NCBI RefSeq assembly: GCF_039654945.1 | Contig: NW_027361891.1 | Location: 8,060,001 to 8,124,000, forward strand | Source of the DNA: Dendrobates tinctorius | Lineage: Eukaryota | Direction: 5' to 3' | Length of the DNA stretch: 64,000 nt | Part shown: piece after piece, positions 3,263 to 58,037 of the stretch | Layout of the letters: the number at the start of each line of letters is the position of its first letter | How positions within the stretch are numbered: the first letter of the stretch is position 1 | Notes under the pieces: generated by a model | Told to the model about the DNA's origin: nothing | The model's database searches: none | What the model saw: the letters and a program-made list of their open reading frames with translations, nothing else | Translations under genes and position numbers: made by a program

Positions 3263-3334
3263 GCACCAAATGCCAGTGAAAAAATGATTATGGACAAATT
3301 ATTCGAGAAGGATTCGCTTGTAAGACAGAGCCAG
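3263..3334 (+). CDS. NUP107: NUP107 internal exon (APNASEKMIMDKLFEKDSLVRQSQ)
   Basis: 72-nt exon with cag| acceptor and |gtatgt donor, phase 0/0. The peptide resembles vertebrate Nup107 (..DSLVRQSQ) and joins the next exon in frame. Confidence 0.93.
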
Positions 3335-4369
3335 GTATGTTGGTGTCCTTCGAGGCATCATTTGAGGTAGCTAGTAAATTTCTTATATTTATGAAATAAA
3401 TAACTTTGTTCCTCCAGTAGTATACCTGCTAAATGGGATGTAGACTTTTAGGATATTTTTTTTACGTGTTTTGGGCCCTTGAATTTTGATTGACACGTGT
3501 CCAGATCCTGAAACACCCGCCTGTTGTTCAAAAGACCTCTTAAAGGTGTGCAAGTTAGGATACAGAAGTTCACAACTACTGCCCGAGTACGAGCACACAG
3601 CAGAGTATGGATGTAGTAGAAAGCCTATGACTTCTGGGGCGGGGGCGGTGCAGATGGAGATCTCTCAGCACCAAGATCTTGGGAGATGAGATTTCAGCGC
3701 TGTCACACATCGGAACACCCCTCATCCCAGCCTGCATCATCACCCCACTCCTGCCTCCTCCAGCAGCGACCCTGGGACCCCGCTTCAGCGCAGCCACCAC
3801 CCCCGGTAAGCAATAAGATGAATGGATTATAAGAAGCACAATTTTGAAAAAAAAATAAAAATTTCCTATTCTCAAAATTTGGGGTGCGTCTTATAATCCG
3901 AAAAATGCAGTAAGTAAAAAATATTTTATTTAACATAGCAAATTCAAAGACTAAACAATAAGGAATAAAAACTGAAAAAAAACAGTGAGGAAAAGCAGGA
4001 TTATAATAGATAAGCCGGATTACTTACCGGTAATGCTCTTTTAATGAGTCCACGACAGCACCCACTGGAGGTATCGGATCCGCCCATTTGGAACAGGAAA
4101 CCCTACAGGAAAGATAAAAGGGGCGGTCCGCCTTTCCTCCTCAGTTTTACGTTTCAGAGTACCAGAAGGACCGCCAAGGATTAGGCAATGTTCTCTTATT
4201 TTAACATCTTTCTTATCCATTATTTGGTAATACTTTAACTATTGATATCTTTTTAGGGGGGGAAGTGAACGGGTGCTGTCGTGGACTCATTAAAAGAGCA
4301 TTACCGGTAAGTAATCCGGCTTTTTACTCTTCGCCACGACAGCACCCACTGGAGAGATTCCAGAGACCA

Positions 4370-5800: not shown

Positions 5801-7428
5801 TCTCCTTGTCGTAGAGTGTGACGGCTTAGGAAGTCTGCCTTTTGATTGCTCTCGCCTCTTATATGAAGGGCCGAGAGGGACAAAAAATAGTTTTCTGCTA
5901 AGTTTAAAATTTTTGCCGCTGAAGACATCAGAGTCTCTGATCGAGTTCCTCCTTGTCTGTTTATATATGCCACTGTGGTGGTATTGTCCGACAGGATCCT
6001 TACATGCTTCTGTTGGAGCTGCGGAAGGAAGTTGTATAGAGCATAGAACACTGCAGTCAGTTCTTTTAAATTAGATGAGTAATCACATTCCTCTTTACTC
6101 CACCTTCCCTGATAAAACCCATTCTCCATGTGGGCTCCCCAGCCCTGGGGACTGGCATCGGTGGTTACAATACAGGATGGAACTATAACCCATGGGACTC
6201 CTGAACATAAATGGTCATCGTCTAACCACCACTCTAGGGAAGTCAAGACTTTTTGTGACAGGGTTATTTTGCTCTGTAAACGACCACTATGTCGCTTATC
6301 CTCCTGGAGGATCTGGTGTTGTAGTGTACGGACATGGTACTGGGCCCACCGGACTGCCGGGGTGCAAGAATTTAGTGATCCTAATAGTGACATTGCTCCT
6401 CTTAAGGATACACGTGGTTTATCTATAGCTGCTTGTATTTTTTGTTTTGTGAGGATGATTTTTACCTGGGGTAGTAGACATCTCTGGGTCAAGGAATCTA
6501 GTTGAAATCCTAGAAATGTCTGGAGAGATTGCGGATCGAGTCTGGACTTTTGGATATTGATGATCCAGCCAAGGCTCTGAAAAGAGGAGACTGCGTCAGT
6601 CACGCGTTCAGTACATTGTTTGACTGAATTCCCAATTACTAGGAAGTCGTCTAGATATGGTACAATTAGTGTGTCCTTTTGGCGAAGGTAGGCCATCACT
6701 TCTGCCATCACCTTGGTAAATATTCTTGGTGCCGTGGAAAGCCCGAAGGGCATGGCCGCGTATTGGAAATGACGAATCCTGCCCTCGACTTCCACTGCGA
6801 CTCTTAGGTATTTCTGGAATCTGTTGTGTATAGGGAGATGATAATAAGCATCTTTTAAATCAATCCCTGCCATTACGCAATTTGGGAAAAGAAGCTTTAT
6901 AGTGGATCTAATCGATTCCATTTTGAACTTATAATTTTTTATAAATGAATTTAGCTTCTTTAAATTAATAATGGTTCTAAATGTACCGTCTGGTTTAGAC
7001 ACCAAAAACAGGGGAGCGTAAAAGCCTCTACCCTGTTGTTCCTCAGGGACGTCAACTAAAACTTTTTTAGCTAGCAGGACTCGAATCTCGTCTTCGAGAG
7101 CCTTTTGCTGAAGTGAGGAATTAAGGCGAGTTATAACAAAGAACTCATAGGGGATTCGAAGGAATTCAATCTTTATTCCTTCCTTGATTATATTCAAAAT
7201 CCATGGGTTTAACGTAATTTGTTCCCATTTGGTAAAAAAAAATTTTAATCTGCCCCCAACCGGTGGGTCTAAACTTTTAATTTTTTTCTCTCCTATATGT
7301 TGGCCCTCTGAAGATGGTACCCTTCTGCTTTTCGTCTTTCGTGGCCCATCTCGTTCTGTCCAATTGTCTTCTTCTCCCGAATGGCCGTCTTTTAAAGGTT
7401 TTCCTATAAAACGGAATGGGAGAATCAC
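5383..7428 (-). CDS. DIRS B ORF2: reverse transcriptase / RNase H / DAM-like methyltransferase
   Basis: RT motifs DLKDAYYH, MPFGL, YLDD; RNase H motifs TTDAS, SDNTT, ADFLSR; MT motifs DLFA and YAFPP. Start codon uncertain. Confidence 0.95.
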   Translation of the reverse strand: MILPFRFIGKPLKDGHSGEEDNWTERDGPRKTKSRRVPSSEGQHIGEKKIKSLDPPVGGRLKFFFTKWEQITLNPWILNIIKEGIKIEFLRIPYEFFVITRLNSSLQQKALEDEIRVLLAKKVLVDVPEEQQGRGFYAPLFLVSKPDGTFRTIINLKKLNSFIKNYKFKMESIRSTIKLLFPNCVMAGIDLKDAYYHLPIHNRFQKYLRVAVEVEGRIRHFQYAAMPFGLSTAPRIFTKVMAEVMAYLRQKDTLIVPYLDDFLVIGNSVKQCTERVTDAVSSFQSLGWIINIQKSRLDPQSLQTFLGFQLDSLTQRCLLPQVKIILTKQKIQAAIDKPRVSLRGAMSLLGSLNSCTPAVRWAQYHVRTLQHQILQEDKRHSGRLQSKITLSQKVLTSLEWWLDDDHLCSGVPWVIVPSCIVTTDASPQGWGAHMENGFYQGRWSKEECDYSSNLKELTAVFYALYNFLPQLQQKHVRILSDNTTTVAYINRQGGTRSETLMSSAAKILNLAENYFLSLSALHIRGESNQKADFLSRHTLRQGEWCLNRKVFRDIVAAWGQPEVDLFATRENRQIKTFASLSPSDHPNILDAFLVPWNFNLAYAFPPLILLPQVIRKIRDDKARIILIAPFWPKRPWFSWLQIMSITDPWVLPTANLLSQGPFFHPQVLSLHLTAWNLRGSY

Positions 7429-8638
7429 TGAAGGCCTTTTTTCTTTCTTTTGCCTTGGCGAGAATTTCGTCTAAGGCTTTTCCGAAGAGGAACTCACCCT
7501 CGCATGGGGTTGCACTAATTTTGGATTTTGATTGTGCATCCCCTTTCCAGCTTTTTATCCAAAGCGCGCGTCTGGCGTTATTCACCAGGGCTGCCGACCT
7601 TGCTGCAAGTCTTAGGGTGTCCGCTGAAGCGTCTGCCATAAAGGCAGCTGCCCCTCTTATCAACGGGATGGCTGCACGCAGTTTCTCCCTTGACACTCTT
7701 TGCTCAATCTGCTGGTCTAATTGATCTAGCCATACCAGCATTGACCTAGCAGTACATGTGCTGGCTATTGCGGGTTTGAATACCCCGGTGGTGGACTCCC
7801 AGGACCTTTTGAGCGAGGATTCAGCCTTTCGGTCCAATGGGTCTGCTAACAATCCTGCGTCCTCGACCGGGATCGAGGTTTGTTTGGAAGTGGAGGATAT
7901 GACAGCGTCCACCTTTGGTATTTTAGACCATTTTAATAGATCTTCATCAGTGAACGGGTACTTCCGTTTTGAAGCGGATGGGAGAAAACCCCTCTGGTCG
8001 TGTTTTTCCCATTCCCTTTTGATGAGATCTTTAATTGCCGGTATTACTGGAAATGATCTCCTCTTTTTTTCTGCCAATCCCGCAAACATAATGTCCTGCG
8101 CGGTCTGGGCTCCCCTTTCCTCTTCACACCCCATAGTATTCCTAACCGCTTTTACCAGGTTATCTACGCTGTCCAGAGGAAAACATGCGCGTCCTTCCGC
8201 CTCCGAGGATGATGATGAGGACGTGGATGCGGAGCCTGAGTTTAACCCCTGTTCTTCCTCTGACTCTGAACTGACAATAACCTGTTTTCTATGCCTGGAC
8301 TCTGCGGGAGTGCTGGCGCGGTTGATGGCTTGTATTTCCTCCCTAATTATGGCTCGGATATCCTGAGAAGATATCGTCGGCCCCTGCCTGGTCTCTTTCA
8401 TGCATTGTTTGCAGAGTTTTTTGGGGTAGGAGTCAGGGAGAGGCTCTGAACATAATGCACATTCTTTATGTTTTGTTTTTCCTTTTTTCTTTGACGGTTC
8501 AGATGGCTGAGACGGTTTGGATCGGGTTTCTGCTGCCTCGCTCCTGCGGGCAGTCTCCGTCCTGGCGCTGCGGTCCCTGGTGGAGTTGCCCCCAGCTGAA
8601 TCCCCTGCTGGGGTTTGCGACTCTGCGGGGGACGACAT
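7277..8638 (-). CDS. DIRS B gag-like ORF1 (453 aa, CxxC-x12-CxxC)
   Basis: ATG-initiated ORF containing CALC..CKQC. Homologous to the gags of C, D and E (DPLDRKA, RRALW.K.W.GD, LFG..LD). Confidence 0.92.
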   Translation of the reverse strand: MSSPAESQTPAGDSAGGNSTRDRSARTETARRSEAAETRSKPSQPSEPSKKKGKTKHKECALCSEPLPDSYPKKLCKQCMKETRQGPTISSQDIRAIIREEIQAINRASTPAESRHRKQVIVSSESEEEQGLNSGSASTSSSSSSEAEGRACFPLDSVDNLVKAVRNTMGCEEERGAQTAQDIMFAGLAEKKRRSFPVIPAIKDLIKREWEKHDQRGFLPSASKRKYPFTDEDLLKWSKIPKVDAVISSTSKQTSIPVEDAGLLADPLDRKAESSLKRSWESTTGVFKPAIASTCTARSMLVWLDQLDQQIEQRVSREKLRAAIPLIRGAAAFMADASADTLRLAARSAALVNNARRALWIKSWKGDAQSKSKISATPCEGEFLFGKALDEILAKAKERKKAFSDSPIPFYRKTFKRRPFGRRRQLDRTRWATKDEKQKGTIFRGPTYRREKN

Positions 8639-23166: not shown

Positions 23167-24384
23167 CACTCACTGGCCACTTTATTAGGTACACCTGTCC
23201 AACTGTGTGTTAAGACTTAATTTCTAATCAGCCAATCACATGGCGGCAACTCAGTGCATTTAGGCATGTAGACATGGTCAAGACAATCTCCTGCAGTTCA
23301 AACCGAGCATCAGTATGGGGAAGAAAGGTGATTTGAGTGCCTTTGAACGTGGCATGATTGTTGGTGCCAGAAGGGCTGGTCTGAGTATTTCAGAAACTGC
23401 TGATCTACTGGGATTTTCACGCACAACCATCTCTAGGGTTTACAGAGAATGGTCCGAAAAAGAAAAAAAATCCAGTGAGCGGCAGTTCTGTGGCCGGAAA
23501 TGCCTTGTTGATGCCAGAGGTCAGAGGAGAATGGGCATACTGGTTCGAGCTGATAGAAAGGCAACAGTGACTCAAATTGCCACCCGTTACAACCAAGGTA
23601 GGCAGAAGAGCATCTCTGAACGCACAGTGCGTCGAACTTTGAGGCAGATGGGCTACAGCAGCAGAAGACCACACTGGGTACCACTCCTCTCAGCTAAGAA
23701 CAGGAAACTGAGGCTACAATTTGCACAAGCTCATCGAAATTGGACAGTAGAAGATTGGAAAAACGTTGCCTGGTCTGATGAGTCTCGATTTCTGCTGCGA
23801 CATTCGGATGGTAGGGTCAGAATTTGGCGTAAACAACATGAAAGCATGGATCCATCCAGCCTTGTATCAACGGTTCAGGCTGGTGGTGGTGGTGTCATGG
23901 TGTGGGGAATTTTTTCTTGGCACTCTTTGGGCCCCTTGGTACCAATTGAGCATCGTTGCAACGCCACAGCCTACCTGAGTATTGTTGCTGACCATGTCCA
24001 TCCCTTTATGACCACAATGTACCCAACATCTGATGGCTACTTTCAGCAGGATAATGCGCCATGTCATAAAGCTCGAATCATCTCAGATTGGTTTCTTGAA
24101 CATGACAATGAGTTCACTGTACTCAAATGGCCTCCTCAGTCACCAGATCTCAATCCAATAGAGAATCTTTGGGATGTGGTGGAACGGGAGATTCGCATCA
24201 GGGATGTGCAGCCGACAAATCTGCGCCAACTGTGTGATGCCATCATGTCAATATGGTCCAAAATCTCTGAGGAATGCTTCCAGCACCTTGTTGAATCTCT
24301 GCCACGAAGAATTGAGGCAGTTCTGAAGGCAAAAGGGGGTCCAACCCGTTACTAGCATGGTGTACCTAATAAAGTGGCCAGTGA

Positions 24385-24562: not shown

Positions 24563-27500
24563 TTTTCCAGGTCACCACCTGACAGCACACTGGAGGACGT
24601 CCTTCTTATCTGTAGTGGGACAGGAAACCACGAGAGTTTAAAAGGATCCTCCCCCTACCATCCATTAGTGTTTTTCCTGTCCCACTGCGGATAGGAACGA
24701 TGAGAGAAGATCCGACCGTTCCACGCAGATGGTTAGGATTGGGGGGCCCAGCCTTTCCCTTCCTACCGCAAGAAGTCTTCTGCTGACACCCGACAGAGGG
24801 TCCCTCAGCCCATCCAGTGTAGCGCTGCTCGTGGAGACTGGGTCGCTTCCTCCTGATGGGGTCTCTTGACCCCAGACACCGGAGCCCGGACCGTCTCTAT
24901 GGAGTCTTCCGGCCCCACAAGCGGACCCCGGCAGCAGATCACCGCACTTTCTCCCCTCCGTGGGACGCGGTCAGGAACACGGCGCCGTGCCGGGGGACCG
25001 GGGCGCGTCATCAGAGCGGGAGCGTGCCACAGACCGGGGGCGCGTCACTTCCAGTCGCGTCATCAGCCGGGGCGCGTTGCTTCCGGTTGCGTCGCACTGC
25101 GTAACTTCTGGTCGGCGACTGCCCGGCGTCACAAGCCGCAGGCGGTATAGGCCCACCAGAGAGGTGGGCAGGCTCCAAGGAGAGGATTGGCAGCACGGAT
25201 CGGCAGCGCGCAACAGGCAGCGGTACGCAGGGCTCTGCTGCAGTTGGAGGAGCCGGACGCGGTTCCCAAGGTTTACACGTCTGTGTCTTTACAGCACAGG
25301 CAGCCACAGTATTCCTCTCTACCAGGATGGAGGAGGAAAAGACTGAGACGGGAGCAGAGAGCCAGGGTCACGTGAGTAGCCTCAAAAGAGAGGTCGCTGC
25401 AGGGCCCCAGTAAGACACACCTCACAGAGCACGTATTTTATATGTTCCAGGGGGAACCTCCACCTCAGAGAGAAAGGAGCCCAAGAGGAAGGATAAGAAG
25501 TGTCCAGTTTGCTCTAAGAAGCTAAAGGACACGTGGCAAAAAAACCCTCTGCGATGCATGTACAAAACACATAGTGGGGGAGGAACAAGCTACACTCATG
25601 TCTAACATGAGAGCAATAATTAGGGAAGAAGTACAGGCCTCGGTATCCAGCCTAGCCACCTCCCAGACACCGCAGGTGAACCCCCAGTTATCCAAAAGGA
25701 GGCAGAGGGAATCTGACACGTCTTCCGAAGATATCCTGTCCGAATCAGACGCAGAAGTGGAGGAAATCAGAGAGCACCCAGAAAGGGGAAGGAAATACCT
25801 TTTCTCATCAGGGGATACGGACGAGCTACTGGGGGCAGTGCGGCAGACTATGCAGATTGAGGAACCCCCGGCTACCCTCTCAATACAGGACGAGATGTTC
25901 GGGGGGTTACGCTCCCAGACTTCGATGGTCTTCCCAGTAAACACCCATATACGGGCAATGATATTGGACGAATGGGAGGAAGCAGAGAAGAGATTGACTA
26001 TCCCCAGAGAGTTCAGACTTCGCCTGCCGTTGGACCCAGAGGAGGTCAAGGTTTGGGAGGAGGTCCCTAAGATAGACAGCCCAGTGGCGAAGGTATCAAA
26101 AAAGACGGCGATTCCTTTCGAGGACTCCTCAAGCTTGAAGGAGCCCCTAGATCGGAAGGCAGATGGACTCTTAAAAAGGGCCTGGGAGAGTTCAGCAGCG
26201 GTCATAAAAATGAATATAGCCGCGACATCAGTGGCACGCTCCATGCATCTATGGATAGATGATTTGGAGGAGCACCTGTTAGATAGAACTCCGAGAGAAA
26301 CTATCCTGAGGTCCCTCCCCTTACTAAAATTAGCTACTGGGGTTTTGGCTGACGCCTCGGCGTAGTCTGTTAGGTTCACGGCCAGAAGCCAGTCCTTGTC
26401 CAACACAGCCAGAAGGGCTATCTGGCTTAATAGTTGGTGACATGCAGTCAAAGAATAAGCTATGATCAATTCTCTTATCGGGGGGGGGTAGAGTTTTCGG
26501 GCCCGTGCTCGATGATATCTTGGAGAAGGCATCAGATGAAAAAAAGGGGTTCCCTGAAGAGAAACATAAAAGATACCAGCCCTTTCGTAGACCCCGTTAC
26601 AACCAAAGAACGGACTACAGAGGGAAGGGGAAGTCGGGTCGATGGAGCTACCCCAAAGGGGGCGAGGGTAGAAGTAGGAATAGAGATATCATCTTCTCCG
26701 GCCCAAGGTCCAGCTCCCGAAAAAAATGACGCAACCAGAGTAGGGGGGCGATTGCTCAAGTTCAGGGGAAAATGGCAGGAGGTTACCTCCAGCCCCTGGG
26801 TACTACAAGTCATTTCTCTGGGGTACAGGATAGAATTCAAGTCCCTGCCCCCAAACAGATTTTTAGTGACCAGTTCTCGACTCAATTCATCTTCCCCCAT
26901 GTGGTTGGACATCCAGGATCTCCTGGAGATGGAAGCAATTACGCCAGTACCCGCCCAGGAAGAAAGGAGAGGACACTACTCGAGCCTCTTCGCAATAAAA
27001 AAAACCCTCTGGGGAGACCAGAACCATAATAAATCTCAAGCCCCTAAACAAGTGGGTAGCATACAAACGCTTCAAAATGGAATCAATAAGATCCACGTTT
27101 CCGCTTCTGGGAAAAGCGGCTGTAATGTGCACGCTCGATCTAAAAAGCGCGTATTACCACGTCCCCATCCACCCAGATCACCAAAAATATCTTAGGTTTG
27201 CGGTCGAAAGGAACGGCAGGATACACCATTATCAGTTTCGCTGCCTACCCTTCGGCCTAGAATCAGCCCCAAGAGTCTTCACAATAGTAATGGTAGAAGT
27301 ACTGGCCTACCTAAGAGCCCGAAACATCACGGTGGTCCCGTATCTAGACGACTTATTATAGCCGATTCAGCAACCCAGCTCAGAGTCGACTGTCAGTCCT
27401 CAATCTCCACGCTGCAGAGTTTGGGTTGGATCATAAATTGGTCAAAGTCAGATCTCATACCCAAGTCCAGAATAACCCTTTTTGGGGGTCATGCTAGACT

Positions 27501-35200: not shown

Positions 35201-38012
35201 TGTCCAATCTTTGCTTCATCCTGGACAGCAAAGACCATAGCCACGTGGGCAGACGACCTTCGGCAGGGCATCTTAGATAAGGCGCAATCGGAGCATTTGG
35301 CCAATCTCGCCAATCAGATCTCCCATGCTGGGGACTATCTTCTCTCCGCTTCCTTGGATGCTGCATCCTGTGCAGTTCAGGCGTCAAGCAACGTTATTGC
35401 AATTCGACGTACAATTTGGCTAAAGGCATGGCAAGCGGACTTGTCTTCTAAAAAGTCCCTCACTAACCTGCCTTTTCAGGGGGTGCGCCTCTTTGGGTCC
35501 CAATTGGACCAGATTATTAAGGACGCCACCGGAGGCACGAGTTCACTCCTCCCTCAGTCCAAGCCTCGCAGACCCCCACTAAGGCGTCAGTTTCGACCCT
35601 TTCGGACTTTCCGCCGTTTCAATACGGCGGACAACTCCTCCAGCCAACAGAGACCGAAGGCTCGCCAGGAGAGAAGGAAAGTTTCCTTCAGACCCACTCC
35701 TTCCTGGCGACCCCACTCCTCCCAGAGCAAACCATCCAGATCTAGATCTGGACGGTCTACGTCAGCATGACTATCATCGGGCACGCGAGGGGCCTTTCCA
35801 ATTGGGAGGTCGACTTCTTTCCTTCAGGGACGTTTGGCTGGCCGCCGTGGAGGACGCCTGGGTCAGGGAGGTTGTATCCTCAGGATACAAGATAGAGTTC
35901 GTCTCTCTCCCACGGGATCGTTTCTTCGAATCCCGGCCTCCAAAGGATCCAGCCTTGATCCCGGGGTTCTCTACAGCTATCGCCGCTCTCCTCAGTTCCG
36001 GGGTGATTGTGCCCGTTCCCGAATCGGAGCGCTTCACGGGGTTCTACTCGAACCTGTTTGTAGTGCCGAAAAAAGACGGCGCAGTTCGACCCATCTTGGA
36101 TCTCAAGCTGCTCAACAAGAGGGTCCGCCTTCGCCACTTCCGCATGGAGTCGCTTCGCTCGGTCATCGCCTCCATGGAGGAGCAGGAATTCATGTGCTCA
36201 ATAGACATCCAAGATGCCTATTTACATGTTCCAATTTTCTCCGGACATCAGAAGTTCCTGCGCTTTGCGATTCGACAGCACCACTACCAGTTTGTCGCAC
36301 TGCCCTTCGGTCTTGCCACCGCTCCCAGAGTCTTCACGAAGATCATGGCTGCGTTGATGGCTTTGTTGAGAGTCAGAGGCCTCGTTCTTTTCCCGTACCT
36401 AGACGATATTCTGATCAAGGCTCCCTCATTCCAACAGGCTCACCAAAGTTTGTCAATCGTCCTGGACACTCTTTCCAATTTCGGGTGGATCGTCAACAGG
36501 AAAAAGTCCTGTCTGGTTCCTACCCAACGCCTGGTCTTTCTAGGTCTTCTGTTCGACACTCGTCGGTCAAGGGTCTTTGTCCCACAAGAAAAGATTCTCT
36601 CTCTGCAGCTGGAAGTACGATCGCTGCAGACCTCGCGATTCCCATCCCTCCGTACAGCCATGAGGGTTCTGGGAAAGATGGTCGCGGCGATAGAGGCAGT
36701 TCCCTTTGCCCAATTTCACGCCAGGCCTCTCCAGCAGGCCATTCTGTCGAAGTGGAACAGGTCGCCTCGGTCCCTGGATCGCCCTGTCCATCTTTCTTAC
36801 CGGATCAAGCGGTCTCTCAACTGGTAGTTGTCGTAACCTCTCATTCTGTCGGGTCGATCCTTCCTTCCCATTCACTGGCAGATAGTAACCACAGATGCCA
36901 GTCTCCTCGGTTGGGGTGCTGTGTTCCGCAACCACACTGTTCAGGGTCGATGGTCGGATCGGGAATCAGCGCTACCGATCAACGTTCTGGAGATTCGAGC
37001 GATCCATCTTGCTCTGGTCCACTGGGAAAGGCTCCTCAAGGGACTGCCGGTACGGATTCAGACAGACAACGCCACAGTGGTGGCATATGTCAACCGCCAA
37101 GGGGGAACACGGAGTGTTTCAGCCCTGGCGGAGGTGTCCAAGATTCTTCGTTGGGCGGAGATTTCCGTCCCGACAATTTCCGCGGTTCACATTCCCGGCG
37201 TAGACAACTGGGCCGCCGATTTTCTCAGCCGCGAGGGTCTCGCAGCGGGAGAATGGTCCCTACATCCGGAAGTGTTTCATCTGCTCTGCCTTCGGTGGGG
37301 AACCCCGGATGTAGACCTCATGGCGTCTCGCCTCAACAGGAAAGTCCCACAATTCGTGTCCAGGTCTCGGGACCCTCTGGCAGTGGGCGCCGACGCCCTG
37401 GCCGTTCCTTGGTCCCAGTTCGAACTTCCCTACCTGTTCCCTCCTCTGCCTCTTCTTCCCAAGCTGTTGAAGAAGATCAAGGCAGAAGGACTTCCGGTCA
37501 TTCTCATCGCCCCGAATTGGCCCAGAAGGTCTTGGTTCGCGGACATTGTCAACCTTCTCGCGGACGCCCCCTGGAAGCTTCCAGACAGAACAGATCTGCT
37601 GTCTCAGGGTCCGATTTGCCACCCCAATTCTCGGCCGCTCAATTTAACGGCGTGGCTGTTGAGACCGAGGTTCTGAAACGAGCAGGATTTTCCGACCACG
37701 TAATTCAGACCATGATCCGAGCCAGAAAGCCATCATCTTCCAAGATTTACTACCGTACTTGGAAGGCCTTTTTCACTTGGTGTGAGACCAATGACGTCGC
37801 GCCCATGTCCTTTTCGCTCCTTTCAGTCCTAGCGTTTCTTCAGGCAGGATTGGATGCGGGGCTTGCCCTCAGTTCCCTGAAGGGTCAAGTTTCGGCGCTG
37901 TCCATTCTGTTTCAGAAAACGTTGGCTTCCCGTCCTCAGGTTAAGACCTTTCTTCAGGGCGTGGCTCACACGGTCCCGCCGTACCGGGCGCCCGTGGATC
38001 CATGGGATCTTA

Positions 38013-41000
38013 GGCTACTTTCACACACCAGGTTTTCGGCGTCAGGCGCGATCCGGCGTCGTGCCGGAATGCCGGATCCGGCAAATGTTTTGTAAAACCT
38101 GAAGTGCCGGATCCGGTTTTCTGCCGGATCCGTCTTGTTCTTGACAGACAAAACCGGATCCGTCTCATCCGGTTCATCCGTTTTTCTATCCGTTTTTCGA
38201 CGGATTACGCCGGATCCGGTTTTTAAAATTGACCCTTGTGGCCTTCCGAACGGGATTGGCTACTGGAAAACTAGATATAGCATGTTCCTACAGCCCTCCT
38301 TTGACAGGTTGTAGAGAAGAAAGTGCAGGTTGGAGAGAAGAGCAAGTTACTGGCGAAGATGGATGTTGTCATTGGAAATATTACCACTAGAAGTTCTGTG
38401 ACGGTTTCAGGGACAATTTTCCACTATACTTTATGTCACCTCAAGGCAGAGTACACTGGGATGACAGAGTGTGAGAGATTTTTGCCCTAAACTTGTGTAC
38501 CTTCTGGACCAACAGTATATACCTTTGCCAACCAAAGTTGGCTATCTTGTCATGGTCTTACTATTTTTACCTTTAGGCCACAGGTGTGTACCTGGTTGTG
38601 TTTTATGCAAAGTATTTCACCTTTTAACAAAAGTTGTGTACATTGGTAGGAAATCACCAACAATAAACACAACTTTTTAGGTGTAATACTTTCCTTCAAA
38701 CACAACCAGGAACACAACTGTGGCAAAAAGCTAAAATTTACCCACAGTTATATACCTGGTTTTGAATACCTTTTTACCTTTGAAATACCCTGTATTTAAC
38801 CTATTTTTAAAACATAGTTCGCCGCAGAAAGAAATGACAGACAACCATTGTGAAACGATAATTTAACTTTTATTTAAATTTTTTTTTTTTTGTAAAATGT
38901 TTTTAAAGTGCAAAAAACTTTTTTAATAAAGGTTTTAAACCCAATGGGTATTTTTATTACAAAAAACACACATTACAAATCTGTGTACTGTGGGGTGGAA
39001 ATACTGCTGGAGGGGCTGCGGGACACTTCGACACTGGGTGTGTAGAGAGAGGACTGGGATCGTGGTGGGGAAGGAACAGTTAGAGGTGAAGGTGTGGAAA
39101 AAGCTACAGAATGGGTGGACATGTGGGAGGCAGAAGAGGTGGTGGGCGGTGGAGTGGAGGGTTGGGCAGGGACTGTATGGGGAAGGAGTTTGGTACGGGG
39201 AAGGAGTTTGGTACGGGGCAGGTTGCTGGAAGTGGGGAGATGTCTGGTACTGGGGAGGTTGCTGGTACTGGTGAGGTTGCTGGTATGTAATAGGAGGGGG
39301 AGGATGGAAAGTGGCTGGAGGGGGTGCAGATGTAATAGGAGGGGGAGGATGGAAAGTGGCTGGAGGGGGTGCAGATGTAATAGGAGGGGGAGGATGGAAA
39401 GTGGCTGGAGGGGGTGCAGGTGGAGGAACTACAGTGGTGGGAGGTGGAGGTTGGGAGGTAACCTGCTGTAGAGCACCGTGGCACGAATGCATTACATGCA
39501 TCTGCTGGGTAGGAGATAGTGTTGCCATGCGCTCCACAACAGACCTGAAAAAGGTGTGGTTTGGCGAAGATCTTGCTTCTGAATGCATGGTTTGCAGAAG
39601 TGTCTTCACCTCCAGAATGCTGGAGTTGATCTGCTGAAAGCCTGCGGAGATTTGCTCTGACAAGACTTTGAGACAGTTCTGGAAAGATGCATTCAGATGC
39701 AAGAACTCTTGCGCATAACTCTTTTCCTGACCCCTCTGCCGCTGCCGCCCAGTACCCGCAGGTGTACTAGAGGTGGCAGGGGCAGAAGGGTGGGGTAAAG
39801 GGAAAGCGATCTCCTCACCAGCAGCTTCATGTAATGTAGGCGGCCACGATGCTCCTGTGCTGGTGGATGGGACAGATGGGTCGAATGTGTGGGAAGGCTG
39901 GGAAGGTGCAGATGTACCGGGGCGGTCGAAGTGTCCCTCGGTGCCGGTCTCCTCAGGGATCGCCTCAGAAGGGTCCAATCGTGCAGGCTCCCGAGTGCTG
40001 CTCACCGTGCTGTGTAATAAAGAGAAAAAAAACAATTAAAATACTGACATGGTATGGCCCTGGCTGAAAAAAAAAAATTACATCTAACATTTTTTTCACA
40101 TGTGGTGTGTAATATTTACCTTCTGGTGAGCATTGTTTCCCGGAGGAACGACAGGGCTTGTGCGTACTTGTACTTGCTCCTGCGTCCTCCAGATCCACTC
40201 GGGGCCCGCATCTCTTTATTGAACTCCTTCTTGAAACGATCCCTCACAGACCGCCACCGATTCACAATTCTGTTCCCTGAAACGAGAAAGGAGTGGTTAG
40301 TATACAACATCAGTGTTTCACAAACTCCAGTCCTCATGGTCCCCAGGGGTCATGTTTTCAGGATTTCCATAGTAAATAGAAATCCTGAACACATGATCCG
40401 TGGGGACCACGAGGACTGGAGTTCGGGAAACACTGGTTTACATCAAGCAACCGTTACTGTATATACTTACGCTCTTTAATCTGGGCCCGAGCTTCGAGGT
40501 CCTCCCAGCGGCCCACAAGGAGAGAACAGATTTCCTCCCAGAGTCGTCGGGTAACGATCAGGTCAGCGTGGCGGCGGTCAGCCATATTCCAGAGCGGCTC
40601 CCTTTCTCTGACGAGATCGATGAGGCGGTCCACATCAATCCCTCCATCCTCACCGTCAGAGTCGGGAGCACGCTGTGAAGGCTGTTAAAGAAAAAGACAA
40701 AAATAACATAATTAGCCTCCACAAAAGAAATGAAATAAAAAGTGCAAAAAAAAAAAAGCAAAAATATTTATACTTACACGCTGGTGACCGCCGCGTTGCT
40801 GTCGCCGACGACCCTGGGAGGCACTGCGAGGACCTCTTGGCCGAGCACCAGATTGGGAAGACTAGAGAAGAAAACAAAAAATGTTATGTCTTTGGATGTA
40901 GGCATTTGTTTGCTGTGTGTGGTCTGCAGAACATTGTTTTCTATGTGTTGTGTGTAGTGTGATGTTGTGTTTCTGCGTTTGATGCAAAAAACTTACGAAT

Positions 41001-51200: not shown

Positions 51201-52498
51201 TAGTTTTGAGTAGCTTGAGGGGTGCAGTTTTTAGAATGGTGACACTTTTGGGTATTTTCTGCCATTTAGACCCCTCAAAGTGACTTCAAATGTGAGGTGG
51301 TCCCTAAAAAAAATGGTTTTGTAAATTTTGTTGTAAAAATGAGAAATCGCTGGTCAACTTTTAACCCTTATAACTTCCTAACGAAAAAAAATGTTGTTTC
51401 CAAAATTGTGCTGATGTAAAGTAGACATGTGGGAAATGTTATTTATTAACTATTTTGTGTCACATAACTCTGTGGTTTAACAGAATAAAAATTCAAAATT
51501 TGAAAATTGCAAAATTTTCAAAGTTTTCGCCAAATTTCCATTTTTTTCACAAACGCAAAAATTATCAACCTAAATTTACCACTATCATGAAGCCCAATAT
51601 GTCACGAAAAAACAATCTCGGAATCGCTAGGATGCGTTGAAGTGTTCCTGAGTTATTACCTCATAAAGGGACATTGGTCAGAATTGCAAAAAATGGCCAG
51701 GTCATTAAGGTCAAAATAGGCTGGGTCATGAAGGGGTTAATAGAACCCTGGGGTCAGAATCAGAGCGCTGAGGGATTTGCCCTAACTACCATACAGGAGA
51801 TCCCTTTAAGAGAGCCTGGGGTCAGTACCAGAGCATTTGAAGTAAATTGCCCTGACTTCCATACAGGAGATTCCTTTAAGAAAGGCCTGGGGTCAGTACC
51901 AAAGTACAGAGTGGATTTGCCTTAAATTCCATACCAGTGATCCCTTTAAGAGAAACTGGGCTCAGAACCACAGAGCTGAGTGGAAACGGTCCTAACTTCC
52001 ATACTGGAGATCCCTGTAACAGAGGCCTGGGGTCAAAACCAAAGCCCTGGATGGATTTGCTCTGACTTCCATACCAATGATCCCTTTAAGAGGGAAGATG
52101 TGCCTATATGATGGAGGATGTGTCATGTTGATATAGGCATGGGAGGGGGTGATTCATTTCTGTCATGTGCTCTCTGCTCCTTTCTGGGGGGCAGACAATG
52201 GCTGGGAGCTTATGTTCCCAGGGATGCTAGATTTCTTCCACCATGTCAGTGTCTGCTGAGGTGTTGTCAAGTGGGAAAACTTGCTCATAGCAACCAGTCA
52301 TAGCTCAGCTACATTTAACCAGCTCTGGTGAAATGAGAGATGCTTAGTGATTGGTTGGTAATACACACACACACATTCAGTTTTATATATAGAGATTATT
52401 ATAAACCTTTTGACCTATGTATATTACATCTCTTTCTGCTGCTTGTCGCGACCTTGTGTGCACTCATGTTATGGTATACCTTATAAAAAGGATTGTTT

Positions 52499-55400
52499 TT
52501 TATTCGGTCGTCCATGACAGCACCACCTAAGAGAGGGGATCCGCCCTTCAGGAACAGGAAACCTACAGATACAAAAGGGCGGCACCTCTCCCACGCATCA
52601 GTTGGTTTCCTGTTCCAAGAGGACCGGACTTCCTTCAGATCGTCCGTCATGGAGTCGTCGAGGGATTCACAGGCCGGCTGACCGACCCAGTCAAGCTCGG
52701 GGTCCCTGGAAGCGCCACGGTGGGGCCGGGTAGGTCGCCACGGCAGTGGTTGGAGCAGGTGGAGCAGAGGGTCCGGTGGACAGCCTCCTCCAGAGTGCCG
52801 GCACCAAGAGGTATGTATGCCGGGCCCCTCCTGGTGCGCTCCCCCCCGGGTCCGGTCTCCCTTTCCGTCCGTGCCGGCGGTTGCGCCCAGTCGGCGGGCG
52901 CAGGGCGGCGCACGTGGGGGCTTCAGGCATGTCTGAGCCGGGGGCGCCGTGCCGGCTCCTTTCCGCGCGCTCCCGCGGTCTCAGACGAGCGGCGGAAGGG
53001 GTGTGTGCTCGGCTGTCCTGGGTAGCGCGCGGTGCCCGTGGCGGGTGGGGGGTGGCCGGTGCATGCAGGGGGGAGGTCAAGGGGGAGTCCCGGGTGGGAG
53101 GTGCCGCGCCAGAACCCTGCTGACCCGGACACTAGGAGGCCTTATTAGGCAGGAGGTGACGCTGCTGGGGTGCTTCTGAAGGCCCAGCAATGGATACGAC
53201 AGAAGCCCCCATAGAGCAGCAGGACGAGGTGCAGGAGCACCCACAGAAACAGGCCACGGTAAAGCCTCATGCGAGTGGCCAGCAGAAGAAACAGAAACGA
53301 ATAAGCGAACAAAGCCACAGAAGTTCCTCCAGACTAAAGGACCCTCCTGCCTCCCTCCGTGATCCGGTACCTACCTCATCTGCATGGGTAAGAGATCTCC
53401 GTGAATGTACCCTGATGCAGTGTTCCCTTATGTTTTCCCGTAGCTTTCTTCCCCTGCGAAAAAAACATAAGCACAGGGAATGTGCCCTCTGTAGTTGCCC
53501 CTTGCCAAACGGCCACCCTAAAAAGTTGTGTCAGCCATGTGTGCGACAAACGGTAGGGGTGGAAGGGGACGGTGGCCCAGGGGTAGATTGACAGGCCCTT
53601 ACACTCTCCCCCGTCCATACAGGTAGCGGAAGAAACGCCAGACTTCACCACAAGCCTGAGGGAGATAATCAGGACAGAGATGAAGGCCCTATCTAAAAGG
53701 GATTCTTCTAGGGGAAGAGAATTTAGTATCTCAGGTTCGGAGTCCTCGGCCGCCCCTAGGAACGATGACTCCTCAGATTCCCCGGCCTCCACTTCGTCTT
53801 CTTCGGAGGAAGACTCGAGCCGATTCTGCTTCCCCTTAGACCAAATGGATCGGCTAGTTAAAGCAATAAGGTCCACCATGGGGGTAGCAGACGCCAAGCC
53901 AGAACTTTCGGCACAGGACGTGATGTTCGGGGGTCTAGATCCCAGAAAGCGCAGGGCCTTTCCATTAAATGATAAGGTCCAGAGCCTGATAAATAGGGAA
54001 TGGAAGAGACCTGAAAAAAGGGGCTCCTTACCACCTGCCTTCAAGCGGAGGTACCCGTTTGATGACCCAGTGGTAAACAGATGGGATAAGGCCCCTAAAC
54101 TGGACGCGGCAGTAGCCAAAGCCTCCAAAAAATCCTCCATACCGTTCGATGACATGGCCTCCTTAAAAGACCCGCTGGATAAAAAAGCGGATTCTTTCCT
54201 AAAGGGAACATGGGAGATGTCAGCAGGCGCTCTAAGACCAGCAATAGCTGCCACATGTACGGCCAGATCCATGATGGTCTGGCTAGATCAACTGGATTCC
54301 CAACTGACGGACGGAGCCTCAAGAGCATCCATTCGAAAAACTCTACCAATCATCCAAAGTGCTGCTGCTTTTTTGGCTGATGCTTCAGCAGACTCTGCAA
54401 GGATGGCGGCTAGGACCGCGGGTTTATCTAACGCAGCACGAAGGGCTCTCTGGTTAAAATGCTGGCCAGGAGATATCCAGGCCAGGTCACGACTCTGCTC
54501 CATTCCATGTGAGGGGGAATATCTGTTTGGCCCCGTCTTGGATGAACTTTTAGAGAAAGCCGGGGATGATAAAAAGAAGTTCCCCAGTCTGCCGAATCCT
54601 TCTTATAGACGTCCCTTTACCAGGAAAGGATATTTCCGTAGTAGGCCGTCCAGGGATCAGGGCAGATGGGATGACAAAAGGAGAGGTACAGAATTCATGT
54701 TCGGAGGAGGGGGGCGCCAGGAAGGTCCAGCACGTGACACTAAAAAGCCGCCCCAATGACTAGTTGCTCCGGTAGGGGGGAGACTAGCTGCCTTCTACCC
54801 AGCCTGGTCTATGATTTCTAGTAGTAACTGGATACTGGGGGTGATAGCTGTGGGTCTACGACTAGAATTCACCCGAGTTCCCCAAGATCGATTTAAGGTC
54901 ACCCCACTCAGGACTTCCACGTCAGAACAAGCTGCCCTGGAGGCCGAGGTTCATGATCTTTGCCGCAAGAAGGTCCTAACTATGGTTCCAGAGGGAGAAA
55001 AGGGGAAAGGTTTCTACTCCCCTCTGTTCCTGGTCCGCAAGCCAGACAGCTCCTTTAGGACTATAATAAATCTTAAGTCCCTCAACGAATTCCTGGTCAT
55101 ACGCCCGTTCAAAATGGAGACAATTAATTCAACAATAAAATTGCTGTTTCAAAATTGCTTTATGGTAGTGTTAGATTTAAAAGATGCCTACTACCATATA
55201 CCCATTCATACAGCTCATCAGCGTTTCCTCAGAGTGGCGGTTCAGTTAGATGGGTCAGTTCAACATTTCCAATATGCGGCCCTCCCCTTTGGGGTGGCAG
55301 TCGCTCCCCGAGTGTTTACTAAAGTGGTAGCGGAAGTTATGGCCCATCTACGTGAATCAGACATTCTAGTAGCCCCCTACTTAGATGACTTCCTGATTGT

Positions 55401-58037
55401 AGGGAAAACGGCGAAACATTCTGTGGAACAGCTACAAACAGCAATGTCTGCCCTAGAGCGGTTAGGATGGCTGCTTAACATCAAAAAATCTCGGTTACAG
55501 CCGGTGAGAGTCCAACAATTCTTGGGCCTGATCCTGGATTCTGAGAAACAGGAATGCCGTCTGCCTCCGGAGAAGCTTGTTCGCCTACACTATCAGGTCC
55601 TGAACGCTTCCAATAACCCTACCATGTCCCTCAGGAAAGCCATGTCCCTTCTGGGTTCTCTTTCGTCCTGTGTCCCAGCGGTCCAGTGGGCCCAGTTTCA
55701 TTTAAGAACACTACAGGGCGAAGTCTTAGTGCATCAAAGAATCCTTGGGGGTTACTTAGAGGGCCAGCTAACCTTGTCCCGAAACACAAGGGAGTCCCTA
55801 GAGTGGTGGCTAGACAAGGATAATTTATCCAGAGGGGTTCCCTGGGAGTATGACATCCCGCATAATCACCACGGATGCTAGCCCTTCCGGTTCGGGGGCT
55901 CATATGGGTGAGATTCTGGTCCAGGGCCTATGGGAGCATCATCAGATAGAAATGTCATCTAACCTGAAAGAATTGACAGCAGTAGAACAGGCAGCTAAGA
56001 GGCTACTTGTGTATCTACAAGGCCATCATGTGCGAGTGTTCTCCGACAATCAGGTCACCGTGGCTTATATCAACCACCAAGGCGGGACTCGTTCCAAACC
56101 CCTGATGAATGTGGCAGAACGGTTGTTCCGGCTAGCAGAGCGGCATTTTCTATCTTTAACAGCTCTACACATAAAAGGGAAAGAAAATATCACGGCAGAT
56201 TTCTTAAGCCGCAATCTGCTAAAACAAGGAAAATGGTCCCTAAAAACCTCCATCTTCGACCTGATTGTACAAAAGTGGGGACAACTAGAGGTAGATCTCT
56301 TCGCCACCATGGAAAACAGAAAATTAAGACAATTCTGCTCCCTAAATCCCAGAGAGAACCCCCTGGCGGTAGATGCCTTTCTGATAAAGTGGGACTTCAG
56401 GCTAGCATACGCCTTCCCTCCCCTATCGCTACTACCCCAGTGATGAGGAAAATCAGGAGAGACAGAGCAAGGGTTATACTTATCGCTCCATTTTGACCCA
56501 GGAGGGCATGGTTCTCATGCCTCAGGACAATGTCGGTGTCTGATCCTTGGGTCCTTCCGGACATCCCGGATCTCCTATCCCAGGGCCCAGTCTTTCATCC
56601 TCAGGTGGCTGGCCTACATCTGACGGCGTGGAGTTTGAACGGACACTGCTAAAAGAGAAAGGCTTCTCCCCAGACCTGATTAACACCCTACTTAAAAGTA
56701 AAAAAATCGTTACTACCAAAATCTATGTCAGAATTTGCAAGAAATTCCTTCAGGACTCTGCAATAGTCGCTGGGGGTTCAGCACCTATAAATCACATTTT
56801 AGAGTTTCTTCAGATAGGTCTGGATATGGGGCTTTCCACTAGTACCCTTAAAGTACAGGTATCAGCCTTGGGGGCCCTCTTTAGCTGCAACATCGCGGGT
56901 AATTACTGGATCAGTAGATTCATTAAGGCAGCAGGTAGATCCAGGCCAATAATCAAGGATAGATTCATGCCGTGGGACTTGAACCTAGTCCTCACGGCTA
57001 TGACTGAGGCTCCATTCGAACCTATTTCATCAGCTTCCATAAAAAACCTATCCCTTAAAGTAGCCTTCCTGATAGCTCTAAACTCAGCTCGTAGAGTAAG
57101 CGACATCCAGGCATTATCTAGGCGTCCTCCTTATATACAGTTTAAGGACGATAGGGTAATACTCAGACCTGATCCGGCGTACTTACCTAAGGTAGTTTCT
57201 AGCTGACACAGGAATTAGTCCTTCCATCCTTCCTCCCTAATCCAGCTAATGAGAAGGAAGAGAAACTACACACCCTAGATGTTAGGAAATGCCTCATAGA
57301 ATATCTGGCAGTTACCAATCCCTGGAGAAAAGATAATGCCCTGTTTGTCTCCCATCAAGACCCTAGGAAAGGTTGTAGAGTGTCAAAAAACACACTAGCT
57401 AGGTGGATTAGAGAGGCGATTTCAATAGCATACACCTCAAAAGGCAGGTCGCCACCCGGGAAGCTGAGGGCGCATTCCACCAGAGCCATGGCGACCTCGT
57501 GGGCCGAGAGATCAGAAGTCTCCATCGACCAAATATGTAAGGTGGCTACTTGGTCCTCTCCGAGCACCTTTTATAGTCATTATAGGCTAGACTTGGGTGC
57601 TTCCACAGACCTCTCTGTTGGTATAAGGGTGCTGCAGGCTGTAGTTCCTCCCTAAATAGTTATTACTCTCTGTAATTCTCTCAGGTGGTGCTGTCATGGA
57701 CGACCGAATAAAGTCGTAGTTACTCATCGGTTAACGGTATTTTTCGGAGTCCATGACAGCACCCGTATATTCCCTCCCTTTAGTTTAAAATTGGGGTGTG
57801 CACTTCTTCCTCTTATATGTACACGGGTAATTTAAATAGTCGTGTAAAGTATTGTATATAGATTATGCTATTAACGATTGTGGTCCTCTTGTGCTCTGTA
57901 ATCCAGCTGATGTGTGGGAGAGGTGCCGCCCTTTTGTATCTGTAGGTTTCCTGTTCCTGAAGGGCGGATCCCCTCTCTCAAGTGGTGCTGTCATGGACTC
58001 CGAAAAATACCGTTAACCGGTGAGTAACTACGACTTT
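52499..58037 (+). mobile_element. DIRS1-type retrotransposon E, full length, several frameshifts
   Basis: Left end tttattcggtcgtccatgacagcacc; ICR ~57686-57763; right end aactacgacttt. gag 53190-54759, RT 54760-55881, RH/MT and YR fragments to 57655. Confidence 0.95.

What the first reader, a model, noticed from the sequence alone, without database searches (positions are those of the whole stretch)
53553..53622. Spliceosomal-type intron interrupting the gag ORF of a retrotransposon (DIRS E)
Seen: ACG|GTAGGG...TTGAC...ctctcccccgtccatacAG|GTA, 70 nt, phase 0, containing the stop of ORF 53190-53591. Removing it fuses that ORF to ORF 53680-54759, giving CQPCVRQT-VAEETPDFTTSLREIIRTEM. This is gap-free against element C's uninterrupted CDACTKHI-VGEEQATLMSNMRAIIREEV. 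A second candidate (|GTAAGA 53388...cgtAG| 53443) does not restore frame as written. Established: retroelements normally lose introns during reverse transcription, with few exceptions (some Penelope-like elements). Inference: together with C, D and F, these DIRS families keep minimal introns at different positions. That implies unspliced RNA is selectively reverse-transcribed while spliced RNA makes Gag.
Basis: partly seen in the sequence, partly recalled or inferred. Interest (0 to 1): 0.75.

Follow-up and report, generated by a model that had tools for sequence, protein, structure and literature searches.

The report
Short intron inside frog DIRS gag
A jumping gene (DIRS retrotransposon) in a poison-frog-like genome carries a 70-base segment with every sequence hallmark of a small intron in the middle of its capsid-like gene. 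Other genomic copies carry the segment too, so full-length protein probably needs spliced RNA while the copied RNA stays unspliced. Splicing itself has not been seen.

Summary
Positions 53553-53622 are a 70-nt GT..AG segment in phase 0 that holds the stop of ORF 53190-53591. Without it, the zinc-finger exon (ends ..CVRQT) abuts the LAP2alpha-type gag exon (starts VAEETPDF..). This junction has no gap or overlap against 11 homologous frog DIRS gag proteins.

- **Signals:** the donor, two branch-point motifs, a 15/20 pyrimidine tract, CAG|G and three GGGG runs together occur by chance at fixed ends about 6e-6.
- **Shared by other copies:** contigs from a DNA run, including one of high depth, cross the segment colinearly at about 90% identity with no gap. 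No copy lacking it was seen among the joints shown.
- **Lineage-specific:** five other DIRS families are continuous at this point.
- **Not shown:** no spliced junction appeared in contigs of three runs of unknown type, and no family-E DNA from other species could be fetched.

The scan has noted DIRS gag introns before on other DNA of this genome, and one follow-up supported a start-of-gag intron. Here the second candidate (53388-53443) looks like that older intron. It has homologous counterparts in element C and in another Logan contig.

Verdict: a probable real intron retained in a retrotransposon (about 0.6). This is a new variant of a known kind.

The parts
52499..52608 (.). Left inverted terminal repeat of DIRS element E
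   Evidence: Inverted-repeat pairs I1 and I3: 99 nt, 95% complementary to 57900-57998.
53190..53387 (+). gag exon 1a: N-terminal low-complexity region from the ATG at 53190
   Evidence: ORF list and translation. It aligns with the N-termini of the frog DIRS gag models P0007, P0008, P0009 and P0011.
53388..53443 (+). Candidate intron 1 (56 nt, GTAAGA..CTGATG..pyrimidine tract..TAG). It probably corresponds to the older start-of-gag DIRS intron.
   Evidence: It encodes about 19 residues that no homologue has. It shares AATGTAC and CTGATGC with the 58-nt segment 142-199 of L001. It passes the same donor and acceptor criteria. Its removal leaves the frame off by one.
53444..53552 (+). gag exon 1b: basic stretch plus a C-x2-C-x12-C-x2-C zinc-finger-like motif, ending ..CVRQT
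   Evidence: Translation. The cysteines are nearly invariant in alignment A1. It is 59% identical to residues 52-83 of A's gag.
53459..53465 (+). A7 homopolymer where the reading frame after candidate intron 1 and the zinc-finger frame are offset by one
   Evidence: A homologous A-run in element C (25538-25544) also sits at a frame break. I propose no correction.
53553..53622 (+). The finding: a 70-nt GT-AG intron-like segment (intron 2), phase 0, holding the TGA of ORF 53190-53591
   Evidence: Other genomic copies carry it colinearly (X1 record 1: 53529-53804, 0 gaps).
53553..53587 (+). Donor (ACG|GTAGGG) and the G-run-rich 5' half (three GGGG runs)
   Evidence: There are six overlapping GGG in 35 nt. 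Only 0.18% of 35-nt windows in element E are as rich. G triplets are known enhancers of short vertebrate introns (PMC4463651).
53588..53602 (+). Two branch-point-like motifs: TTGAC (A at 53591, 31 nt from the 3' splice site) and CTTAC (A at 53601, 21 nt)
53603..53622 (+). Pyrimidine tract (15 of the 20 bases 53601-53620) ending in CAG, followed by G
53623..54759 (+). gag exon 2: LAP2alpha-type domain, open to the stop at 54757-54759. There is an internal ATG at 53680.
   Evidence: Pfam PF11560, E 1.8e-15. Best relatives are dendrobatid DIRS gag models, up to 70% identity.
54760..56643 (+). Reverse transcriptase / RNase H region in three frame pieces, with breaks near 55845-55850 and 56413-56440
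   Evidence: tblastn against intact element A and Pfam RVT_1 and RT_RNaseH hits. Indel variants at both breaks occur in other copies (table 4).
56233..57652 (+). Tyrosine recombinase region, with a frame break near 57206-57215
   Evidence: tblastn against A's recombinase ORF. That ORF has a weak Phage_integrase hit.
57677..57763 (.). Internal complementary region
   Evidence: Inverted-repeat pairs I2 and I3.
57900..58037 (.). Right inverted terminal repeat
   Evidence: Inverted-repeat pairs I1 and I2.

Best explanation
Positions 53553-53622 are a genuine short U2-type GT-AG intron inside the gag gene of a DIRS1-like retrotransposon family. The family has many copies in a dendrobatid-like frog genome. 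The intron lies four codons after a zinc-finger-like motif. Splicing would join that N-terminal exon to the LAP2alpha-type body of Gag. Unspliced RNA can encode only a 133-residue zinc-finger fragment, or a body starting at the internal ATG 53680. The genomic copies keep the segment, so the RNA that is reverse-transcribed must be the unspliced one. The intron is specific to this lineage, because other frog DIRS families are continuous at this point. It was therefore gained after those families split. Shown: the splice signals, the exact colinearity with homologues, and presence in other copies. Inferred: that it is spliced in vivo, that Gag comes from the spliced RNA, and that the template for copying is unspliced.
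For: - **Boundaries and frame:** exact ends, phase 0 and the internal stop were read directly.
- **Colinearity:** the end of exon 1 and the start of exon 2 abut with no gap or overlap against 11 homologues carrying the pattern C..C(I/V)..T(I/V).EE.P.F.
- **Chance:** a donor scoring at least 6/9 occurs at 0.8% of window positions. The full acceptor (YAG, pyrimidine tract, branch motif) occurs at 0.077%. The joint probability at fixed ends is about 6e-6.
- **Branch points:** two motifs lie 21 and 31 nt from the 3' splice site.
- **Length and G runs:** the length falls in the 66-85 nt short-intron class. The 5' half has three GGGG runs, and only 0.18% of 35-nt windows in the element are as rich. 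This is the known enhancer pattern of short vertebrate introns (PMC4463651).
- **Not private:** a DNA-run contig of depth about 500 covers 53529-53804 with 0 gaps at about 90% identity. Summed contig depth in the two bins holding the segment (8044 and 5478) lies within the range of the neighbouring bins. No skip-70 joint is listed in the DNA run.
- **Other breaks differ:** the copy's RT frame breaks show indel variants in other copies, whereas the 70-nt segment does not.
- **Exon 1 is intact:** it still has a complete zinc-finger motif.
- **A second intron-like segment:** one lies upstream and has counterparts in element C and in L001. Small introns in the 5' part of gag therefore recur in frog DIRS.
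Against: - No contig joining 53552 to 53623 appeared among the joints shown for three runs of unknown library type. Contigs of X5 and X13 cross the segment unspliced.
- The donor is only moderate (GTAGGG, 6/9).
- The copy itself is decayed, with three other frame breaks.
- I could not see the letters of other copies. Conservation of GT, AG and the branch point across the family is therefore untested.
- No family-E relative from another species could be examined at the DNA level.
- The body of Gag could in principle be translated from the internal ATG without splicing.
Confidence: 0.6

Rival explanations
1. The segment is a fixed but non-functional 70-nt insertion. An alternative form is a once-functional intron that is no longer spliced. 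In either case the subfamily spread anyway. It could have used Gag supplied in trans by other DIRS elements, or a shortened Gag started at ATG 53680 together with a separate 133-residue zinc-finger peptide. The splice-like signals would then be coincidental or relict.
For: No spliced junction was seen, and contigs of X5 and X13 (library type unknown) cross the segment unspliced. The internal ATG at 53680 opens a 359-codon ORF that holds the whole LAP2alpha domain. Intact DIRS copies that could supply proteins exist in the same window (element A). This copy is decayed.
Against: Donor, branch motif, pyrimidine tract, CAG|G and G runs all sit exactly at the two ends of the homology break, at about 6e-6 by chance. 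Exon 1 keeps an intact zinc-finger motif that would be useless if it were never joined to the body. With such signals, a Pol II transcript would be expected to be spliced at least in part (established knowledge of intron definition for short introns).
Confidence: 0.27
2. The two gag frames are joined by programmed +1 ribosomal frameshifting at GAU-UGA-C (53586-53592). The ORF1 stop overlaps the start of the open stretch of the downstream frame there. This would produce a Gag with a 23-residue linker encoded by the segment.
For: The downstream frame opens at 53587 and ORF1 stops at 53589-53591, so a one-codon window exists. A shift at a stop codon followed by C resembles known +1 sites (recalled knowledge, not tested).
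Against: The window is a single codon wide and could easily arise by chance. There is no stimulatory RNA structure (z about 0). The product would carry an insertion absent from all 11 homologues, whereas removing the segment gives exact colinearity. The splice signals would be left unexplained.
Confidence: 0.03
3. The segment is private to this copy: a late insertion, or an assembly artefact.
For: The copy has other frame breaks at which other copies show indel variants.
Against: Independent contigs from the DNA run and from two other runs (X5, X13) cover the segment colinearly with 0-2 gaps at about 90% identity.
Confidence: 0.02

Closest known systems
Ogre LTR retrotransposons of legumes (intron between coding regions)
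   Same: A retrotransposon keeps an intron within its coding part. Genomic copies retain it, and spliced RNA is used for translation. PMC3735527 cites it as 'Ogre splices between ORFs'.
   Different: Ogre is a plant Ty3/gypsy element. Its intron lies between ORFs rather than inside gag, and its splicing has been shown experimentally. Here the host is a vertebrate, the element is a tyrosine-recombinase (DIRS) retrotransposon, and splicing is not shown.
BARE1 and copia (small alternative intron giving a Gag-only RNA)
   Same: A small intron of about 100 nt associated with gag. There are separate RNA pools for translation and for reverse transcription. No DNA copies of the spliced form are found in the genome (PMC3735527).
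   Different: In BARE1 and copia the unspliced RNA already encodes Gag, and splicing only removes or disables pol. Here the unspliced RNA cannot encode full-length Gag, so splicing would be required rather than modulatory.
Penelope-like elements
   Same: Retroelements that retain introns after retrotransposition (PMC8557442).
   Different: PLE introns are ascribed to an unusual target-primed mechanism and mostly lie in the 5' UTR or pseudo-LTR. DIRS elements use a tyrosine recombinase and a free cDNA intermediate (PMC7192593). The intron here interrupts a coding sequence.
Retroviruses (unspliced genomic RNA, spliced subgenomic mRNAs)
   Same: The logic of keeping splice sites in the genome by packaging only unspliced RNA (PMC5035971 abstract).
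   Different: Retroviral Gag is translated from the unspliced RNA. Here Gag would need the spliced one, which is the reverse arrangement.
Start-of-gag intron of frog DIRS noted earlier in this scan (s1-376925)
   Same: Same genome, same element class, and a small GT-AG segment in the 5' part of gag. I saw its likely counterparts in L001 (142-199), in element C (25372-25450) and as candidate 1 in E (53388-53443).
   Different: That intron lies upstream of the zinc finger and is shared by diverged families. The 70-nt segment lies after the zinc finger and is absent at that position from all five other families examined here.

Membership tests
DIRS1-like tyrosine-recombinase retrotransposon | Reverse transcriptase / RNase H of retroelement type | tested here: met
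   RVT_1 at E 6e-18 and RT_RNaseH at 1.5e-5. The region is 54-58% identical to the RT ORF of intact element A.
DIRS1-like tyrosine-recombinase retrotransposon | Tyrosine recombinase instead of a DDE integrase | tested here: met
   tblastn to A's recombinase ORF gives 52-56% identity. That ORF has only a weak Phage_integrase hit, E 0.0013 and below the Pfam cut-off.
DIRS1-like tyrosine-recombinase retrotransposon | Inverted terminal repeats plus an internal complementary region | tested here: met
   ITR arms 52510-52608 and 57900-57998 are 95% complementary. The ICR at 57677-57763 is complementary to both ends.
DIRS1-like tyrosine-recombinase retrotransposon | ORF1 (gag-like) with a LAP2alpha-type domain, as in vertebrate DIRS1-like elements | tested here: met
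   PF11560 at E 1.8e-15. The literature link is PMC4495291 and PMC9210276.
U2-type GT-AG spliceosomal intron | GT donor and AG acceptor with flanking consensus | tested here: met
   ACG|GTAGGG matches the consensus at 6/9, and the acceptor is CAG|G.
U2-type GT-AG spliceosomal intron | Branch-point motif 18-40 nt upstream of the acceptor, followed by a pyrimidine tract | tested here: met
   TTGAC and CTTAC lie 31 and 21 nt from the 3' splice site. The tract has 15/20 pyrimidines.
U2-type GT-AG spliceosomal intron | Length compatible with vertebrate splicing | tested here: met
   70 nt falls in the 66-85 nt short-intron class described for human (PMC4463651). The G-triplet enrichment is typical of that class.
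U2-type GT-AG spliceosomal intron | Removal restores a continuous coding sequence that is colinear with homologues | tested here: met
   Zero gap and zero overlap against 11 homologues, with the exons aligned as separate rows.
U2-type GT-AG spliceosomal intron | Spliced junction present in RNA and absent from DNA | tested here: inconclusive
   No 53552 to 53623 joint was listed. The runs were Logan contigs of unknown library type, and contigs drop rare forms.
Intron-retaining retroelements (works like Ogre, PLE) | The intron is present in many independently inserted genomic copies | tested here: met
   Colinear contigs at about 90% identity, one of them of depth about 500, with no dip in summed depth across the segment.
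Intron-retaining retroelements (works like Ogre, PLE) | Splice signals conserved across copies and species while the interior drifts | not testable with these tools
   The letters of other copies were not retrievable. The protein searches were blank or marginal for this family, and the NCBI frog loci returned no DNA.
Programmed +1 ribosomal frameshift site | Overlap of the two frames with a shift-prone codon and a stimulatory element | tested here: inconclusive
   Only a one-codon overlap exists, and the RNA fold is not exceptional (z 0.1-0.7).

The most novel reading that the evidence does not exclude
Frog DIRS retrotransposons repeatedly gain small spliceosomal introns inside gag and keep them through many rounds of retrotransposition. 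Here a lineage-specific 70-nt intron has been added downstream of an older, shared start-of-gag intron. That would require a replication cycle that copies only unspliced RNA while Gag is made only from spliced RNA, the reverse of the retroviral arrangement. The introns might be kept because spliced transcripts escape host surveillance of intronless retroelement RNA, or because a signal needed for copying lies in or next to them.
Probability: 0.3. Interest if true: 0.8.

Novelty: new variant of a known kind. Interest (0 to 1): 0.6.

Why it matters
Retrotransposons are expected to lose introns, because they copy themselves through RNA. The known exceptions (Penelope-like elements, Ogre, copia/BARE) are few, and none is a tyrosine-recombinase element. 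The DIRS surveys held in the library (PMC3266345, PMC3783388, PMC9210276) do not mention introns or splicing at all.

A DIRS family with many copies that all keep a coding-region intron has two uses. First, it gives a natural system for asking how a retroelement separates its translated RNA from its copied RNA. Second, the intron is absent from sister families, so it is a datable case of intron gain in a vertebrate genome.

It also matters for annotation. ORF-based TE pipelines will call such gag genes broken or truncated when they may be intact after splicing.

Tried and rejected
**Fetching other family-E copies**
- The word search with the exon-1 ORF and with the first 113 residues of the exon-2 frame was blank.
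- The exhaustive representative search with the exon-1 ORF gave only two marginal hits.
- The metagenome scan found nothing.
- The best exon-2 relatives are only 70% identical.

**DNA of dendrobatid gag models**
- All six NCBI look-ups returned 'no DNA'.
- I tried to infer introns from gene range minus CDS length (excess 89-135 nt). I rejected this because the model resembling the uninterrupted element A also shows an excess of 102 nt, so the ranges may include UTRs.

**Gene models that start just after the junction**
- I considered that models such as P0001, P0002, P0012, P0019 and P0020 show the same interruption. I rejected this.
- In L001 the frame is continuous through the junction. The late start reflects the lack of an ATG downstream of the upstream intron-like segment.

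**Alternative in-frame acceptor for candidate 1**
- An AG at 53470-53471 would give an 84-nt intron. I rejected it because its upstream context is purine-rich and it is not the first AG after the branch motif (reasoning only).

**RNA structure as a packaging or frameshift signal**
- z-scores were 0.1-0.7, so there is no signal.

**Origin of the 70 nt**
- No other copy or fragment of it occurs in the window.

**RNA evidence**
- The single read-laying run showed no spliced joint. The nearby joints (53544>53586, 53558>53642, 53560>53672) do not use the predicted sites. They look like diverged or replaced stretches in other copies.

**Not done**

Full report
**What is there**

The window is TE-rich vertebrate DNA. 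tblastn with the three ORFs of an intact DIRS element (A, 4370-8638, minus strand) finds five further DIRS copies or fragments. Element E is one of them.
- E is bounded by inverted terminal repeats at 52499-52608 and 57900-58037, which are 95% complementary over 99 nt.
- It has an internal complementary region at 57677-57763.
- Its ORFs carry a LAP2alpha-type gag domain, RVT_1 and RNase H, and a recombinase region homologous to A's.
- These are the defining parts of a vertebrate DIRS1-like element (PMC4495291, PMC9210276).
- The nearest proteins in the public collection are gag models of dendrobatid frogs: Dendrobates tinctorius at 70% and Ranitomeya imitator at 68%. The genome is therefore from a related frog whose own proteins are not in that collection.

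- The GT is at 53553-53554 and the AG at 53621-53622. The segment is 70 nt long.
- The exon before it ends on a complete codon (phase 0).
- The TGA of ORF 53190-53591 lies inside the segment.
- The downstream gag frame is open from 53587 and is in frame with 53623.
- I aligned the two exons as separate rows, never joined, with the N-terminal parts of nine frog DIRS gag proteins, elements A and C of the window, and a Logan contig.
- Exon 1 ends (..KKLCQPCVRQT) in the column immediately before the one where exon 2 begins (VAEETPDF..). There is no gap and no overlap against the shared pattern C..C(I/V)..T(I/V).EE.P.F.
- The 70 nt are therefore exactly what is extra relative to the coding sequence.

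**More than chance**

- In this window, 0.8% of positions have a donor at least as good as ACG|GTAGGG (6/9).
- Only 0.077% have YAG preceded by at least 15/20 pyrimidines and a YTNAY motif 15-40 nt upstream. The joint probability at two fixed positions is about 6e-6.
- Two branch-like motifs lie 31 and 21 nt from the acceptor.
- The 5' half holds three GGGG runs. Only 0.18% of 35-nt windows in the element are as rich.
- G triplets are known enhancers of 5' splice-site use in short vertebrate introns, and 66-85 nt is a recognised short-intron class (PMC4463651).

**Not private**

Logan contigs of one DNA run and three runs of unknown type were laid on the whole element at 88% identity or more.
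- The family is abundant, with summed contig depth in the thousands in the DNA run.
- A DNA contig of depth about 500 covers 53529-53804 with 27 substitutions and no gap.
- Contigs of two other runs (X5, X13) cover 53474-53797 and 53489-53795 with two gaps each.
- Depth in the bins that hold the segment is no lower than in the neighbouring bins.
- No joint that skips exactly the 70 nt is listed for the DNA run.
- By contrast, at two of this copy's RT/RNase H frame breaks a large share of other copies differ by a small indel (table 4). Those breaks are therefore not fixed in the family, whereas no copy lacking the 70-nt segment was listed.

**Lineage-specific**

The junction is continuous in element A, element C, L001, L002 and the Logan protein P0025. 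The segment was therefore gained in the E lineage after these families diverged.

**What is not shown**

- No contig joins 53552 to 53623 among the joints shown.
- The three nearby joints use other positions and probably reflect diverged or replaced stretches.
- The library types of the three smaller runs are unknown, and contigs lose rare forms. This is absence of evidence only.
- I could not read the letters of other family copies, so conservation of GT, AG and the branch point is untested.
- No DNA of the sister families in other dendrobatids could be fetched.

**The second candidate**

- Positions 53388-53443 (56 nt) also encode about 19 residues that no homologue has.
- The segment passes the same signal criteria.
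- It shares AATGTAC and the branch-like CTGATGC with a 58-nt GT..AG segment that directly follows the start codon in L001. L001 is a DIRS contig whose gag is 46% identical.
- Element C has a 79-nt GTGAGT..TTCCAG segment at 25372-25450 after a 15-codon first exon. Its downstream exon begins like that of L001.
- This matches the start-of-gag intron that an earlier follow-up of this scan reported on another piece of the genome (s1-376925).
- In E its removal leaves the frame off by one. The offset lies between the acceptor and an A7 run at 53459-53465.
- Translation in the post-splice frame up to that run resembles homologues better than the genomic-frame translation does. This is my reading.
- C also has a frame break at a homologous A-run (25538-25544). 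The intact element A has lysine-codon A-runs at both places.
- I read these as homopolymer length changes in decayed copies, or as assembly slips. I propose no correction.

**Mechanism**

With these signals, a Pol II transcript of the family should be spliced at least in part.
- Spliced RNA would encode a Gag with an N-terminal zinc finger joined to the LAP2alpha-type body.
- Unspliced RNA encodes a 133-residue zinc-finger fragment with a 12-residue tail from the segment. It may also encode the body alone, started from ATG 53680.
- The copies keep the segment, so the template for reverse transcription must be unspliced RNA.
- How that choice is made is unknown. There might be a signal in or near the intron, separate transcript pools as in BARE (PMC3735527), or copying in the nucleus.
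- RNA folding gives no hint of a structured element.
- A +1 frameshift at GAU-UGA-C could formally join the frames. However, it would add 23 residues that no homologue has, and it leaves the splice signals unexplained.

**Comparison and novelty**

- Introns kept by retroelements are known in Penelope-like elements (PMC8557442) and Ogre. Small gag-associated introns are known in copia and BARE1 (PMC3735527).
- None of these is a tyrosine-recombinase element. In copia and BARE the unspliced RNA already encodes Gag.
- The DIRS overviews held in the library do not contain the words intron or splicing.
- I therefore class this as a new variant of a known kind.
- The scan has noted such DIRS gag introns before on other DNA of this genome: 26 notes and one follow-up.
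- Confidence that the segment is a real, spliced intron is about 0.6. The main rival, a fixed but unspliced insertion, is about 0.27.

Noticed in passing
window 53388-53443; L001 142-199; window 25372-25450: A second, older intron-like segment lies upstream of the gag zinc finger. It is 56 nt in E, 58 nt directly after the ATG in a Logan contig of another DIRS family, and 79 nt in element C after a 15-codon first exon. E and L001 share AATGTAC and CTGATGC inside the segment. C and L001 share the first downstream codons (GGG GAA ..).
   Followed up: partly
window 53459-53465 and 25538-25544: A7 homopolymers sit at reading-frame offsets in the gag 5' region of both E and C. The intact element A has lysine-codon A-runs at the homologous places (8483-8488 and 8417-8422). 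These are likely homopolymer length changes or assembly slips.
   Followed up: partly
window 4370-8638 (minus strand): DIRS element A has all three ORFs open: gag 453 aa, RT/RNase H 681 aa and recombinase 476 aa, with the usual overlaps. Its gag is uninterrupted from its ATG. It looks like a young, possibly intact copy.
   Followed up: partly
window 52637-53010: The stretch between the left ITR and the gag start has almost no contig depth in runs X5 and X13 (0-9), although it is well covered in the DNA run (2000-7700). Many differing joints map there, so it is a structurally variable leader among copies, or one that is not transcribed.
   Followed up: no
window 51770-52092: A tandem array with a 70-nt period and five copies of 77-100% identity lies just upstream of E's left ITR.
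   Followed up: no
window 23315-24355: An intact-looking Tc1/mariner transposase ORF of 346 aa, with HTH_Tnp_Tc3_2 and DDE_3 domains.
   Followed up: no
window 35834-38095: A 753-codon ORF with no Pfam hit overlaps the RT frames of DIRS element D. The RT homology to A lies at 35802-37673 in other frames. Another note of this scan (s1-383021) flags it as overprinted.
   Followed up: no
window 25451-25545: In element C, the first half of the zinc finger lies out of frame with both flanks, and that stretch holds a stop codon. There are therefore two frame switches that cancel each other within about 90 nt.
   Followed up: partly
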